A stretch of DNA of 62,942 nucleotides, the filler included, from Reticulomyxa filosa (lineage: Eukaryota; Protista; Foraminifera): NCBI GenBank assembly GCA_000512085.1. It is 18 parts of 18 records of this genome, joined end to end, with 100 filler letters (N's around TTAATTAATTAA, not from the genome) between each part and the next. Parts side by side here need not be neighbours in the genome. Positions count along the whole stretch, not along the records: positions 53,994 to 61,410 come from ASPP01050566.1; 17 more parts are not named here. One strand, written 5' to 3'. The first letter of the stretch is position 1. The number at the start of each line of letters is the position of its first letter. The position numbers and the translations under genes are program-made. The notes below the pieces were generated by a model, which was not told the origin of the DNA, did no database searches, and was given only the letters and a program-made list of their open reading frames with translations. Below are positions 53,994 to 61,325 of this stretch, in pieces.

Positions 53994-54765
53994 AAAAAAA
54001 ATTAATGAAATACAATTATCTAAAAAATTTATTTATGAAATATTACAATATTCACCTATTGTTTTTCATAAATGGTTTGAAAGAAATTGGATTACATCAT
54101 CACAATGGATTGAATCAAGATCTTTATATACTAGAAGTTATGCTGCATGGTCTATGGTTGGATTTATGTTAGCATTAGGTGATAGACATTTAGAAAATAT
54201 TATGATTCATACTAATACTGGTGAATGTGTTAATATTGATTTTGATTGTCTTTTTGATAAAGCTAAATCATTTAAAGTTCCAGAACAAGTACCATTTAGA
54301 TTAACACGTAATATAATTGATGGTTTTGGTATATGTGGTATTGAAGGTGTATTTAGACGATCTTGTGAAATTGTATTACATATTTTACGAGAAAATAAAG
54401 ATGTTATTTTAAATACATTACATTCCTTTGTTTATGATCCACTTATTGATCATAATATGATGCAATCTTTTATTATTCAACAAAGTTCTTATAATTGTTA
54501 TGCTAATGAAGATATACATGTTACTAGAGCACCTTCTGATCAACAATTAAATAAAGAAGCAGAAGCAGCAAAAACATGTTTATATAATGTTAAATTAAGA
54601 TTAAATGGTCATGTTGCAGTACGAAAACCAAATTATCCATGTCCTGTTTATGATAGTACCAGTATTGCTTTAAGTGTTCAAGGACAAGTTCAACAATTAA
54701 TTGATCAAGCTACAGAAATAAATGCATTATCCAAAATGTTTCCTGGATGGATGCCATTTTTATAA
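53994..54765 (+). CDS. ATR: ATR/Mec1 PIKK kinase, C-terminal kinase lobe and FATC; 5'-partial
   Basis: YTRSYAAWSMVG, LGDRHLENI, IDFDCLFDKA, VPEQVPFRLTRN, EGVFRRSCE, FVYDPL, LSVQGQVQQLI...MFPGWMPFL*. Confidence 0.92.
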
Positions 54766-55361: not shown

Positions 55362-57022
55362 TTAAGTATGAGATAGATCAGCTTTATCGATATCATCATG
55401 CTCACTCCACAAATCTTTGACAGCTTCAATTTGTCCCATTAAAGCTGGTAACTGGCTTAGAGCAGTTGTATACCAATTTCGATCTCCAATATCCTCAATG
55501 CATCCTTTGTAAGGTTCTAATATCGACACCCATTTGTCCGAAGTATTTTGAACACAGTAGATGACCACACACAAGGGGACACCCAAATCAATTAATTTGG
55601 CGCACATAGCGATTAATTTGGGTGCTTTGGCGAGCCATTCAAATAATGAATACTTTGCTAAATCTTCAGTCGATTGTGGAGGCTCCAATCCTTGGAAATC
55701 ATAATCAAGCATTAACTGTCTTGTTCTAAAACAAGAACAAACAAAATAATTGCATGTGTACAGAAAGAGAGATGCTTTAATGTTTTTTTTTTGGTATAAT
55801 CTAAGCAAACCTGATTCTAAGCAATTGACAGGCATTTGTTTTGGAAATAGATTTTAGACGATAGGCACGACAATCAATTTGCCATTGATTCTTCAACCGA
55901 TCAAATTCTTCAATTTCTTTATGAACAGTGCTATGACAAATGAGCAAAATTCGAACTCTGGCAATTTCATTGGATAAAACATTCAACGTGGTTAAAAATC
56001 TTCGCAATTGATCTTCCTTATATTCCAAATGATCGAGAATGAACATGGTCGGTCCATGACATTTTTTTTTTATTTGTGCTAACACAGTTTGCTCGTCCAA
56101 AGGTTTAAAAATGATTCGTCGTGTTTGCACACTTCCGTCTTTTCTATCTTTCCAAACTTCTTTTGGAAATTCATTTAACGACGATTTGAACAGACTTCGA
56201 ACTTTTTCGTATATGTCTTTATCCAATGTGGTCATCAAGCGTTTTTCTTGGTTTTTATGAGCGCGGAACAAAATGTATCTATCTTGGTCTTGGTCATCGA
56301 CATATTGAATAACGGAAGGTGTTTCTTCGTATTGTTCGGTGCAAATACGGTCATGAATTTCTTTGGGATAGTCGACCATTCGATTAGTATGATCATCGCG
56401 CTTTTGGAATCTGCCGCGGTCAATGTCCACGTTCATGCGATCGGCTATGAATCCAAACAATCGATCGGAGTCGATCAACGGAGTCAAATCAACCCACCAG
56501 ACGCCCCCAGGGAAAAGTGGAGTGTACCATGGACGAGTGAAGAACTGAGCAACGCATTGTCCAACAGTCGTGCAGCCAACATATTTGGGCCCACACAATA
56601 CTACAATGTCTTGAGGCTTAAATCCATCGGGGTGTAACAAGTGTACTAAGTTGCGCACATCTTCTTGTCTTCCCAACACCTTCATCATACTGTCATAAGC
56701 GCCATGGCCAAAGTTGGTTGGAATTTTATGCAATATGGGTGGGATTGGCTCGTCTTCTTCCACAAACGGTAAGTCATGAAGCACTTTTTCCTTGTGATCA
56801 TCGTTGCCGAGCAACAAAAACTTTTTGCTGTGTTCGTGGGGGGCCTTTGGTTGGCAGCAAGTCATTTGCTGATAGCCAGGACACCCTTTGTGATGATGAG
56901 TACTGCAACAGCGGACTTTTTGACAGTAAGGGCACAAGCACTCTGCTTTGTGTCCTTCATGTCGGCAACAGCAGTCTTCGTGCTCTTGTAACTTTAGTTC
57001 TTTTTTTTTTTTTTTTTCTCAA

Positions 57023-57065
<43 letters not shown>

Positions 57066-60049
57066 CTTATGTATTTATTTTACAAAAAAAACAACACAAA
57101 TATACCGGCTTGAGCGTTTTTGAATGCTTCCAAAACCATTTTTTCTGACCGAGCAGATTTTCATAAAAGCTTTGGGCGAATGAAATCGCCATTTTGTCAT
57201 GGATTTGCACTAAAGAGTGAACAGCGACGACGTGGGGCACGCCCGCGTCGACAAAGGCAGAGGCCACTTGTTCGCTGAAACAAGTGGAGACAAAAACGAG
57301 TTTCAGCTTCCAGGAGCTGTCTTCCAAGGCCGACTTAATCATGACGCTGCTGACGTCTTCCATTCCTCCTTTTCCGTTTTCCACTTGAAGCATTTGAGCA
57401 TTGGGACCGTGGCCGCTGATGTGTAAAATTTGGGTCCCTCGTTGGATGCACATCATCAAAGATTGTTTGGTGAGAACACCAAAAAACACGCCGATTTGGC
57501 GTTGGGTTCGACGGAACACCAGTTCTAGTTTGTCGCGTTCCAGCCCTAAGTCGAGTGAACTTTCGCCTTCCAATGGACTGGAATGCAACACTGCGACGTT
57601 CAATGTTCGTTCTGAAAATGGGATTCTCCCCCGTAGACTGTGTTCACTGGGGATTTTTTCCTCTTCAACCAAGGTTTTTTTAGAAGAAGGCGATTGTATT
57701 TGTGGCTGTGATTGTGGCTGTGTTTGTATATGTGACTCTGAGCTTGATTTGTTTGTTGATTCTGAGCTTGATTTATTAGTAGGTTCAGAGCTTGATTTAT
57801 TAGTGGGCTCAGAGCTTGATTTGTTAGTGGGCTCAGAGCTTGATTTGTTAGTAGACTCTGAGCTCGATTTATTAGTTGACTCTGAGCTTGATTTGTTAGT
57901 GATGTCAGTCGTCTTCTTTGGAGAAATGCTTTCCACATCGCTTATTTTTTCCTCTTCTTCTGGTTTGGGGTCTTCCGATGATAAGGGGGCTTCGTCCGGC
58001 AGAATTGGATCATACGGTGGCAGGCCAGCGCTACTTTGGTGTAGCAATGCAATGGTCGGATTTCTGGGCAAAAAGTGGTTCATTGAGTCGAATCCCTCTG
58101 GCGGTAAACTTGGAATTCTGGGGATGGTAGGCTCTTCAAGTTCCATTTGCCCTTTGTTATCTGACAGATCTAAGTCCGGCGCGAGTTCGTCGTCGCTGTC
58201 TTGTGACGGCTCACGGTCTTTGCCTTTGTCGTTGGCACCTTCGCGGTTGTTATAGTCATCCACTTGAAGCATTGAGGCGACCATCGATCGTCCTTTCAGT
58301 AGCTTCGGATACACTTTGTTGTTAATGTATGAGGGCTCGCGTTCTAATGATGGATCTTCATCCAACAGCCGCAATACCACATTCAACAACTTTGTTTTTT
58401 CACGCGCGTCCTGAAATCTCCCCGTCCGACACAATCTCCACAGCGCTAGTGACAGCGCTTGAGAGGGCAGCGCCATGTCTGTGCATACACTCGCGTACAT
58501 TTCACTACAGTTTCATTATTTAGCACAATCAATTATTATTATTATTATTATTTTTTTTTTTTTAAAAAAAAAAAAGAAGTTTAAAAAATAGTCAATTTAT
58601 ATATTGAATTGTCCATATATCTATATAACACGTATCTACATATATATATATATATATTACACATTATATATACATATATGTACTACATATGCTCTCTTCT
58701 TAACTTGAATCTTTCCGATGAGTAATTTCCCATGCCCATCGCTTCTAAGAATAAAGAACAATTACTGCGGACAGCATCATCACGATCTGTTTTGTTTTGT
58801 TTTGTTATATAATGTTTATGTAAATAAAGATGAAAAAGAAGAAAAAAAAATGTAAATGATCCATACGTGTGAGTTTAAGATTATAAGCTCTTTCTATTAA
58901 CCCCGCTCGCGCGCAACTCTCTTGTATGACGTCTGATTAGGCCGTGATCAGCACATTTTGTATGAGTGTGTGTGTGTGTGTGTGTGTGTTTTGTGTATCA
59001 GCAGAACAACACCTAAAGTAAGCCAACATTGAACTTAGAGGAGAGATAAGAGAGATAAAAAGAAAGTGTAACATCTATCTGGTGAAACTATTTTGGCCAA
59101 TAGCGAAAATGTGTTCCCAATGATACTAACAGCGCCGTCGTCAATATTTCCACATTTAAATAAACATTCCATATGATCTTTTTTTTCCCAAAACTTCCTG
59201 AGCAATTCTATTGTGTCCACGTCCGTCCCCCCCCCCCCCCGAAACAAGATTTTTTATTATTATTTCTTCACACGTCACACTACAAGTACAATCCCAAGAC
59301 ACAATGCAAACCTTTTTTGTCTCTAAAGTCATCTTTGGTCTGGAAGCACACTTGATTGAGGACTACTAACCCTGCTTCCCATATTTGTGCGTCCTTTGCA
59401 TAACAACAACGACAGCGACAATAACAATCAAAAAAAAAAAAAGAAAGAAACATAAACACATCTTATCAAATGATAGTTTGTTATCTGTCATACCAAAAAA
59501 TTTGATAGTTTACAAAGTTTCAAAAATTGCTTTTCTCATTTAAAAAAAAAAAAAATCGTACACAAAAAAATGGATAACTTGCGATTTTTGTAAGAATTCA
59601 ACACTTAAATCTAAAATATTATATTGAAACAATACTTTATGCAATTTCTGTTGGGACGATACAAACGCCAGTGTTCGCAATGAATTTAGCTGAAGCATTT
59701 CATCTTTATCTTGTGTGAATTTCACAATGCGAGGAATATGTTTATTAAATGCCGACATTTCTAAATTTCGTCATCACCCATCCACATTGTATCAAAAAAA
59801 AAAAAAAAAACGCGTCAAATCAAAAAGTTGAGAGGCAAAAAAAAAAAAAAACAACTCGTTGAGATATGTCGTGCTTCCAATCTTAGCAAAGGCAAAACAA
59901 AAACATAAATGAGGAAATCAATAATAACTGTGAGTAAGTTGGGAATTGTACCACATTTGAGCTATGTTTAAATAGTGGTCAGCCGCTTCTTGATCTGCCA
60001 TGCCGTTGGCAGCAATCAGGACTTGTAATTCATCGCCGTCGGTTGTCAT
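55362..60049 (-). CDS. Multi-exon ARM/HEAT-like + CHAT (caspase-like) protease + Cys/His cluster + STAND-type NTPase protein
   Basis: ATG at 60049 and helical-repeat exons. CHAT: VLHSSPL...LDLGLE, ILHISGHG, LQVE, LVFVSTCFS, AGVPHVVAV, AISFAQSFYENL. Cys/His cluster. NTPase: VLGRQED, VVLCGPKYVGCTT, FPGGVWWVDL, MFILDHLE, RILLIC. Confidence 0.8.
57733..57900 (-). repeat. Coding minisatellite, 7 x 24 bp encoding TNKSSSE(S/P)
   Basis: 168 bp, seven units visible in both DNA and translation. Confidence 0.95.
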
Positions 60050-60523
60050 GGCGTTTTTTTATTATTGATCTTACTTTTTCTTTTTTTTTTTTAAAAAGAG
60101 TTCATATTATGATTTTTTTTTTTGTCGTTTGTTTTTTCCTGCTCCCCACACATCACCCTTTCTTTTAAACTAGTTGTCAATGTGAATCGCAACGTATGGT
60201 ATCAAATTCATGCAACAAAACGGATAAAAAAACAAATACTGCCAAAAATATTTGTTTTTGCTTTCGTGGATATCAATGGAGATGTTGAATCTGCTTTCAA
60301 AGTTCTGTTCAAATTTTAATTTTCGAAAGGGGTAGAAAAACACCTTTTGTAAAGCCCTTGAAAGCTAACTTGCTCCTAGACCTGCAAAAAAAAAAAAGGT
60401 ATTTCTCGAGGAATTAAGAATCCAAGATAAATTGTTAATCCTGTATTTTGTCAAAAAGCGAACTGTTTCAACAAAGTGAGTTTTTCACTTGGAAATATCA
60501 ATAATAATAAAAAAAAAAAAAAA

Positions 60524-61303
60524 ATGCTACAAAAAAATTGGCTTCTGTTCTATTCTTGCTGTCTAATATTGCAAACTCATAGTCTGTCTGAAAGGCGTTA
60601 TTTCATCGACTTGCCGCAAGTGGAAGTACCGTTTAGTGCAGCGGTGGACGACGTATTGAGACAAGACTTTATTCGAGAGATAATTGGGTTGCGTGATGAC
60701 GAAATAGCATCTTACGACCCATCATTTGGGAAACTAGGGATAGGGATGAGTGCAATATACGGAGTACGAAACGCACGTTTGAGTCTGCGACAAATGAAAA
60801 AGGAGTTGAAAGAGGAGGTAAATAGCTATCTGGCATCACGAAACGAGGGAAGCCTGAAAGAGATGGAAGGGCAGATAATGGAATTGGAAAACGAGCTTTT
60901 TGAAAGAATAGACGAATGGAATCAAAACGGAGAAGGAGTAGCAATGAGAAGAGAAGAAGAAGGATTGATATTGGATAATTGGGGTCGGTTAGTCCGATCG
61001 ATCCAACGAGCGTACAAATGGATCGAATCGGATCGTCATTACAATGGAATAAAACGTCATTTGAGTCGACGGCCAGGTTCGAATGCAAACATAGCTTCTG
61101 TGGTACCTATGGCAAAGTCTAATGACTATGGGCCAATGTTCCCCATTTCCAAATGGTCTTGGACACACCAAAGCAGACACCCTTTGGACACACTTCAAAC
61201 GGTCCCTTCGTCCAACATACCCTATGTGCGTTTGAACAATGGATTGTTAATGCCTGTCATCGGTTTTGGTTCGTGGCCTTTGATTGGTGAGGATTGCTAT
61301 CAA
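60524..61303 (+). CDS. Aldo-keto reductase with signal-peptide-like start and long N-terminal extension; 3' end lost at linker
   Basis: MLQKNWLLFYSCCLILQTHS start, coiled-coil segment, then IPYVRLNNGLLMPVIGFGSW (AKR first strands) and a GT donor at 61304. Confidence 0.75.
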
Positions 61304-61325
61304 GTTTGATTACAAAAACTATATT

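What the first reader, a model, noticed from the sequence alone, without database searches (positions are those of the whole stretch)
55362..60049. NLR-like CHAT protease/STAND NTPase protein with N-terminal helical repeats: candidate protist immune or cell-death switch
Seen: one apparently complete gene (ATG 60049, stop 55362) encoding helical-repeat exons, a disordered linker, a CHAT domain with both catalytic residues (HISGHG His at 57409-57411; VFVSTC Cys at 57280-57282), a Cys/His cluster and a P-loop domain with STAND/NB-ARC-like motifs (GR pre-motif, Walker A, FPGGVWWVDL, hhhhD Walker B). Known: CHAT domains are caspase/separase-clan proteases, and in bacteria CHAT-STAND-TPR fusions occur in defence and gasdermin-linked systems with the sensor repeats C-terminal. 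Inference: here the repeats are N-terminal and nothing repeat-like follows the NTPase, an inverted layout that could be an autoinhibited, separase-like or NLR-like signalling protease.
Basis: partly seen in the sequence, partly recalled or inferred. Interest (0 to 1): 0.85.

Follow-up and report, generated by a model that had tools for sequence, protein, structure and literature searches.

The report
Foram protease with hidden ADP-ribose-type sensor
Foraminifera share a gene for a caspase-like protease fused to an immune-type switch domain that has lost its ATP-handling lysine and instead carries an inserted WWE-fold module of the kind that reads ADP-ribose, so it may be a protease switched on by a nucleotide signal.

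Summary
The gene is real: nine exons (minus strand, 60049-55362), each mapping in order onto full-length foraminiferan transcripts (Nonionella, Ammonia). The order is armadillo repeats, a disordered linker, a CHAT protease with its His/Cys dyad, a Cys/His cluster, a STAND-derived P-loop domain and a short helical end, with no C-terminal sensor repeats. (1) The Walker A lysine is absent in all 12 foraminiferan sequences covering it, but present in non-foram relatives, so this is probably a pseudo-NTPase. (2) A ~110-aa insert in that domain (56430-56095) has a WWE fold: the top 11 structural hits are all WWE. The phosphate-binding Arg position is kept, the adenine Gln position appears to be Glu, and the stacking Tyr is Lys in this copy only. 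(3) An A6 run (57144-57139) is one base short of the conserved frame, probably an assembly error. The CHAT-STAND core is shared with ciliate-like, oomycete-like and prokaryotic proteins; the armadillo/WWE/dead-ATPase version was found only in foraminifera and in no paper I could search. Best guess: a ligand-gated signalling protease. An immune or cell-death role is not shown.

The parts
59929..60049 (-). exon 1 (start; N-terminal capping helices of the armadillo solenoid)
   Evidence: 40-46% identity to N-termini of P0029/P0031/P0033; the same exon end is seen in paralogues L006 and L008
59579..59760 (-). exon 2, armadillo-like repeat
   Evidence: fold of orthologue 1-262 is armadillo, Z about 17-18
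59312..59393 (-). exon 3, armadillo-like repeat
59073..59207 (-). exon 4, armadillo-like repeat
58867..58932 (-). exon 5, armadillo-like repeat
   Evidence: 72% identity over 18 aa to orthologues
58687..58786 (-). exon 6, last armadillo-like repeat
57106..58504 (-). exon 7: small helical subdomain (about 58500-58340), disordered linker, CHAT domain
   Evidence: linker pLDDT below 50 in the orthologue model
57733..57900 (-). 24-nt tandem repeat, 7 copies, encoding an 8-aa Ser/Thr-rich unit in the linker; specific to this copy
   Evidence: not in the orthologue alignment
57106..57603 (-). CHAT (caspase/HetF-clan) protease domain; its last strand (KFLLL) lies in exon 8 at 56823-56809
   Evidence: Pfam PF12770 32.8 bits; orthologue model vs SAVED-CHAT 8tl0 Z 20.3, rmsd 3.1, 198 aligned
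57409..57411 (-). catalytic His (HISGHG)
   Evidence: invariant in foram and non-foram relatives aligned
57280..57282 (-). catalytic Cys (FVSTC)
   Evidence: invariant
57139..57144 (-). A6 run one base short of the conserved frame; probable homopolymer assembly error
   Evidence: paralogues L006 and L007 read through in the other frame; L006 has its own shift in a C-run
55811..56999 (-). exon 8: Cys/His cluster, STAND-derived P-loop domain with WWE insert
56809..56976 (-). Cys/His-rich cluster (CCC-x-H ... CC-x-P-xx-PH-x-HS-x-KFL) inserted before the last CHAT strand; probable multi-zinc site
   Evidence: about 15 invariant Cys/His in forams; same motif in ciliate-like relatives; zinc binding is inference
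56566..56592 (-). degenerate Walker A (GPKYVGCTT); Cys at the Lys position 56574-56572
   Evidence: Lys absent in all foram members, present in non-foram relatives
56095..56430 (-). WWE-fold domain with a two-helix insertion, nested between strand 2 and Walker B of the P-loop domain
   Evidence: orthologue model pLDDT 89; VIA top 11 hits all WWE, Z 8.2-5.2, next 3.5; Foldseek prob 0.97-0.99 but E 0.06-0.1; Atlas 9 of 10 rows list WWE, the other a PARP2 cluster; window copy aligns over the whole insert
56026..56040 (-). Walker B hhhhD-H (Asp 56034-56032); the following acidic residue is missing
55362..55725 (-). exon 9: STAND helical domain 1 (PK in place of GxP) and a short helical end; no winged-helix or repeats
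   Evidence: 31-33% identity to orthologue C-termini; aligned to the GHP motif of relatives

Best explanation
A foraminiferan signalling protease derived from an older CHAT-STAND fusion. The CHAT domain is an intact Cys/His protease (dyad shown; activity inferred). The STAND domain no longer works as an ATPase switch (residue loss shown; inactivity inferred) and serves as a scaffold. Its inserted WWE domain binds an ADP-ribose-like or other nucleotide-containing ligand, most simply poly/mono-ADP-ribose on proteins (fold shown; ligand inferred). Binding clusters or rearranges the protein and aligns the CHAT active site, as cyclic-oligoadenylate binding does for SAVED-CHAT. The N-terminal armadillo solenoid, tethered by a variable disordered linker, selects substrates or partners and may restrain the protease (inferred). 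The output is cleavage of specific proteins in a stress or signalling pathway; whether it kills the cell is unknown.
For: One gene, constant architecture in full-length foram sequences. Dyad kept in all forams but one paralogue, and CHAT is the best-conserved part, 67% mean identity. Walker A Lys missing in every foram member, present in 18 non-foram relatives. Insert is WWE by three structure searches on one model. By end-register of the structural ranges, model Tyr9 falls on RNF146 Tyr107/HUWE1 Trp1619 and invariant Arg100 on Arg163/Arg1676, the adenine-stacking and phosphate-binding residues (PMC11269756, PMC10877565). Closest solved CHAT fold is the nucleotide-activated SAVED-CHAT (10.1101/2023.06.23.546230). 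One oomycete-like relative continues into an SH2 region, another modification reader.
Against: No biochemical data. No Pfam or sequence-level WWE hit. The adenine-binding Gln position appears to be an invariant Glu (placement inferred from secondary structure), so the ligand may differ. WWE is the least conserved part, 37%. In this copy the stacking Tyr is Lys (56403-56401). Residue mapping assumes ungapped ends; no coordinates were available to inspect the pocket or domain contacts (pTM 0.63). All folds were predicted on the Nonionella orthologue, not the window protein.
Confidence: 0.45

Rival explanations
1. The armadillo solenoid is the regulator. It autoinhibits the CHAT protease (separase- or SARM1-like) and is released by a peptide or metabolite; the dead STAND and the WWE insert are structural or protein-binding passengers.
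For: The armadillo region is conserved at 55%, above WWE at 37%, and keeps Asn residues on successive repeats, typical of peptide-binding grooves (own knowledge). N-terminal repeats regulate TPR-CHAT and separase (own knowledge; papers listed).
Against: The linker is disordered and varies from about 50 to over 300 aa, which fits a tethered recruiter better than a fixed clamp. The WWE pocket positions are invariant or nearly so.
Confidence: 0.22
2. WWE and armadillo are targeting modules only. The protease is constitutively competent and is recruited to ADP-ribosylated or partner-bound substrates in housekeeping work such as the cell cycle or DNA-damage response.
For: Low copy number and constant architecture across distant forams look like a core signalling gene. 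In E3 ligases WWE domains recognise PARylated substrates (PMC11269756).
Against: Characterised CHAT proteases are allosterically gated (10.1101/2023.06.23.546230). Nesting inside the STAND core suggests coupling (inference).
Confidence: 0.2
3. A conventional NLR/apoptosome-like immune switch: ATP exchange in the STAND domain drives oligomerisation and activates the caspase-like domain to kill the cell.
For: The domain descends from NB-ARC/NACHT-type NTPases. Fungal NLRs can carry CHAT proteases, and a TPR-CHAT activates a gasdermin (PMC12881547).
Against: Walker A Lys and the second Walker B acid are lost in all forams, there is no winged-helix or sensor repeat, and no expansion or defence neighbourhood was seen. 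No convincing PADLOC match.
Confidence: 0.07
4. Independent of the family's function, this particular copy is a recent pseudogene, broken by the frameshift at 57144-57139.
For: The frame is broken as assembled and the WWE stacking Tyr is replaced. No RNA run was listed.
Against: The break is a one-base length change in a homopolymer, and paralogue L006 has a similar shift in a C-run. Exon 8 shows purifying selection: pS 0.85 vs pN 0.10 against L001, and 57 synonymous vs 18 non-synonymous changes unique to this copy. All splice sites and both catalytic residues are intact.
Confidence: 0.12

Closest known systems
Prokaryotic and fungal CHAT-STAND(NB-ARC/NACHT)-repeat proteins
   Same: CHAT directly followed by a STAND-derived domain; profile match 91.9%, E 7e-7 to the P-loop domain of such relatives, which hit NB-ARC/NACHT and plant NLR structures.
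   Different: Walker A Lys lost, WWE inserted, no winged-helix or C-terminal repeats, armadillo repeats at the N-terminus.
Ciliate-like CHAT-Cys/His-STAND proteins (L013-L022) and oomycete-like CHAT-STAND(-SH2) proteins (P0006-P0015, L023); taxa inferred, not labelled
   Same: Same CHAT-STAND core; the ciliate-like set also shares the Cys/His cluster.
   Different: They keep the Walker A Lys and have no WWE-sized insert; in the regions read they show no armadillo N-terminus, and those read far enough continue past helical domain 1.
SAVED-CHAT (type III-B CRISPR/CBASS, PDB 8tl0)
   Same: Best structural match of the protease (Z 20.3); a CHAT protease paired with a nucleotide-type sensor.
   Different: Sensor is SAVED binding cA3, prokaryotic operon with PCaspase; no STAND, WWE or armadillo.
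WWE domains of RNF146, HUWE1, TRIP12, Deltex, PARP11/12/14
   Same: Six-strand half barrel plus helix; stacking aromatic and phosphate Arg positions kept in most members.
   Different: Two extra helices, probable Gln-to-Glu change, no Pfam hit, and nested in a STAND domain of a protease instead of an E3 ligase or PARP.
Bacterial iSTAND proteins (PMC7159879) and P-loop-independent plant sensor NLRs with integrated domains (PMC9528088)
   Same: Inactive or dispensable STAND core; caspase-like peptidases occur N-terminal to iSTAND; integrated domains act as sensors.
   Different: No MoxR-vWA context, no iSTAND Pfam hit, no LRR and no known helper partner; an independent eukaryotic inactivation.
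Separase; SARM1
   Same: N-terminal helical solenoid ahead of an enzyme domain.
   Different: No Peptidase_C50 hit, the protease is internal and followed by STAND; SARM1 has SAM-TIR. Armadillo similarity is generic.

Membership tests
CHAT (PF12770) protease | Profile match above the curated cut-off | tested here: met
   32.8 bits vs 24
CHAT (PF12770) protease | His-Cys dyad and caspase-hemoglobinase fold | tested here: met
   orthologue model Z 20.3 to 8tl0
CHAT (PF12770) protease | Proteolytic activity | not testable with these tools
   needs an assay
STAND NTPase (NB-ARC/NACHT-like) | Homologous P-loop core plus helical domain 1 | tested here: met
   Atlas NB-ARC 0.95, 180 shared features; hhalign 91.9% to relatives that hit NB-ARC/NACHT. 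Indirect: no direct Pfam STAND hit, and the best solved-structure match in the full model was Cdc6/Orc1, Z 15.3
STAND NTPase (NB-ARC/NACHT-like) | Walker A GxxxxGK[ST] | tested here: not met
   Lys replaced by C/L/I/A in all foram members
STAND NTPase (NB-ARC/NACHT-like) | Walker B with a second acidic residue | tested here: not met
   hhhhDH invariant
NLR (tripartite receptor) | Winged-helix and C-terminal sensor repeats after the NTPase | tested here: not met
   protein ends in a few helices in all full-length orthologues
WWE domain | Fold | tested here: met
   (orthologue model)
WWE domain | Pfam PF02825 sequence match | tested here: not met
WWE domain | Ligand residues (stacking aromatic, adenine Gln, phosphate Tyr and Arg) | tested here: inconclusive
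   Arg invariant, aromatic kept in 12 of 13 (Lys in the window copy), Tyr position aromatic, Gln position probably Glu
WWE domain | ADP-ribose/PAR binding | not testable with these tools
   needs a binding assay
Armadillo repeat | ARM solenoid fold | tested here: met
   Z 17-18 to catenins and designed armadillos; Pfam ARM hits below cut-off
Separase | Peptidase_C50 domain at the C-terminus | tested here: not met
   no C50 hit; protease is internal
iSTAND ternary system | iSTAND profile match and MoxR-vWA neighbours | tested here: not met

The most novel reading that the evidence does not exclude
A single-chain eukaryotic caspase-like protease activated directly by ADP-ribose-type signals: a WWE reader nested in a dead STAND domain replaces ATP-driven switching, giving foraminifera a PARP-to-protease (possibly cell-death or antiviral) pathway that parallels cA3-activated SAVED-CHAT in bacteria.
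Probability: 0.3. Interest if true: 0.88.

Novelty: new variant of a known kind. Interest (0 to 1): 0.68.

Why it matters
Caspase-like CHAT proteases are known mainly from bacterial defence and fungal gasdermin pathways; protist versions appear unstudied. This family shows a STAND switch converted into a pseudo-enzyme that carries a reader domain inside its core. If the insert binds ADP-ribose, it links ADP-ribosylation directly to proteolysis in one chain and gives a first testable handle on regulated proteolysis or cell death in Rhizaria. It also suggests that the wider protist CHAT-STAND family swaps modification readers (WWE here, SH2 in an oomycete-like relative).

Tried and rejected
RNA support for this copy: no run was listed, so no reads could be laid. 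A 26-nt mini-exon at 59881-59856 was dropped, because orthologues and paralogues show exon 1 running to 59929. Two as-is splice routes avoid the frameshift: an acceptor 8 nt further in keeps the frame but gives non-homologous residues, and a donor just before the A-run removes a conserved CHAT helix; both judged unlikely. A UBA-like identity for the helical subdomain after the repeats found no support. Sequence searches for WWE were blank. Direct PDB profile search with the foram P-loop domain gave noise. PADLOC gave nothing convincing. No relatives in viral contigs (one pattern) or prokaryotic genomes with P0004 as query (close relatives only); the first metagenome scan was blank. The CHAT-only tree recovers foram, ciliate-like and oomycete-like groups but cannot order them, as long branches meet. 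Paper searches found no description of this architecture; the library is incomplete.
Full report
Source and gene. The piece has AT-rich introns with TA and poly-A runs, and its closest relatives are Reticulomyxa filosa hypothetical proteins (RFI_11353, 78% over exon 8; RFI_13748, 13101, 09158 for the N-terminal exons). It is therefore taken as a Reticulomyxa-type foraminiferan gene; I did not establish that it is the same assembly (blank). The model has nine exons on the minus strand: 60049-59929, 59760-59579, 59393-59312, 59207-59073, 58932-58867, 58786-58687, 58504-57106, 56999-55811, 55725-55362, all GT-AG. Each exon, compared separately, matches the full-length orthologues from Nonionella stella (P0031, 1031 aa), Ammonia sp. 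(P0033, 1137 aa) and environmental sequences (P0029, P0043) in order. A marine contig holds one uninterrupted frame from the last repeats to the stop (L002). The joined protein was not searched; orthologues served as proxies for structure.

The break. As assembled, the frame shifts at the A6 run 57144-57139. Paralogues L006 and L007 and all orthologues continue in the frame that reads MVLEAFKNAQA here. L006 has its own one-base shift in a C-run, and exon 8 is under purifying selection, including on this copy's branch. An assembly homopolymer error is the likeliest cause; no reads were available.

Protease. CHAT passes the Pfam cut-off. The orthologue model (pLDDT 83) matches SAVED-CHAT best (Z 20.3). 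A Cys/His cluster with about 15 invariant Cys/His lies before the last strand. A DNA pattern for its end gave 10 of 10 true relatives in metagenomes, at least one needing the ciliate code, so this cluster is older than foraminifera.

P-loop domain. It derives from a STAND NTPase: Atlas features give NB-ARC at 0.95, and its profile aligns through Walker A, Walker B and the GxP helix region with non-foram CHAT-STAND relatives (91.9%), which hit NACHT/NB-ARC and plant NLR structures. The evidence is indirect, since the full model's best P-loop match among solved chains was Cdc6/Orc1. Every foram member lacks the Walker A Lys (L, C, I or A instead), while all 18 non-foram relatives tabulated keep it. 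Walker B is hhhhDH. I infer a pseudo-NTPase. The protein ends after helical domain 1 and a few helices, with no sensor repeats.

The insert. About 110 residues between strand 2 and Walker B have no counterpart in the relatives. Folded alone (pLDDT 89), the insert matches WWE domains: the top 11 of 48,161 chains are all WWE (TRIP12 Z 8.2, rmsd 2.4, 70 aligned; HUWE1 7.6; RNF146 7.3), and the next unrelated chain scores 3.5. Foldseek agrees at probability 0.97-0.99 with weak E-values, and 9 of 10 Atlas rows list WWE. These three searches use one model. From the ends of the aligned ranges, model Tyr9 and Arg100 fall on RNF146 Tyr107/Arg163 and HUWE1 Trp1619/Arg1676, which stack adenine and bind phosphate (PMC11269756, PMC10877565). 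Arg is invariant and the Tyr is kept in 12 of 13 sequences, but this copy has Lys. An invariant Glu probably takes the place of the adenine-binding Gln, so the ligand may not be canonical iso-ADP-ribose. Pfam does not detect the domain.

N-terminus. Residues 1-262 of the orthologue form an armadillo solenoid (Z 17-18). A search of 1.84 billion representatives with this region returned 29 proteins: apart from one generic helical-repeat hit, they are family members, and those I could name are foraminiferan. The linker is disordered and variable; here it includes a 24-nt tandem repeat.

Distribution. The CHAT-STAND core occurs in a probable prokaryote (P0004), in oomycete-like proteins (one followed by an SH2 region) and in ciliate-like proteins; these taxa are my inference from sequence, not tool labels. 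The armadillo + dead STAND + WWE version was found only in foraminifera, which form one well-supported group on a CHAT tree. Reticulomyxa has at least three other copies. Other Rhizaria were not surveyed specifically.

Mechanism. Shown: architecture, intact dyad, loss of ATPase residues, WWE fold. Inferred: a ligand-gated protease in which an ADP-ribose-like signal read by WWE replaces ATP-driven switching, by analogy with cA3-activated SAVED-CHAT (10.1101/2023.06.23.546230), inactive iSTAND scaffolds (PMC7159879) and P-loop-independent sensor NLRs with integrated domains (PMC9528088). I put this at 0.45. Armadillo-based autoinhibition (0.22) and pure targeting (0.2) are the main rivals; a classical NLR is unlikely (0.07). 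An immune or death role has precedent in fungi (PMC12881547) but no support here.

Verdict. A real, conserved and apparently undescribed variant of the CHAT-STAND class. It descends from STAND proteins but fails the NLR membership tests. The nested WWE domain and the family-wide loss of the catalytic lysine are the notable features. Interest 0.68.

Noticed in passing
window 54154-54765 (+): C-terminal part of a PIKK-type kinase (PI3_PI4_kinase + FATC), convergent with the gene and cut by the piece's edge; no match in paralogue loci.
   Followed up: partly
window 60476-61309 (+): 277-aa ORF with a coiled-coil-like middle; its last 40 residues resemble the start of an aldo/keto reductase (from memory, untested). 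No Pfam hit.
   Followed up: partly
L023:6577-7815 (+): An oomycete-like CHAT-STAND gene continues into an ORF with an SH2 domain, suggesting different reader modules in different lineages.
   Followed up: partly
L013-L022: A multi-copy ciliate-like CHAT-Cys/His-STAND family with intact Walker A; no description found in the searched papers.
   Followed up: partly
L006:2369-6517, L007:8001-11944: The public Reticulomyxa annotation splits these paralogues into two genes each; L006 has a one-base shift in a C-run within CHAT.
   Followed up: yes
L006:82-1632 and L008:398-1810: Two paralogue loci share a homologous upstream gene of unknown kind, pointing to a segmental duplication.
   Followed up: no
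P0003 (Bolivina argentea): Paralogue with the catalytic His replaced by Gln: a possible inactive regulator copy.
   Followed up: no
P0001 / P0017: Near-identical proteins labelled Nonionella stella and Bolivina argentea, possibly cross-contamination between transcriptomes.
   Followed up: no
P0059, P0062, P0066: A divergent subgroup with an insertion at the end of the armadillo region; downstream domains unknown.
   Followed up: no
window 58339-58500 (-): Conserved small helical subdomain (M-G-Y-type motif in orthologues) after the repeats; no Pfam or PDB match.
   Followed up: partly
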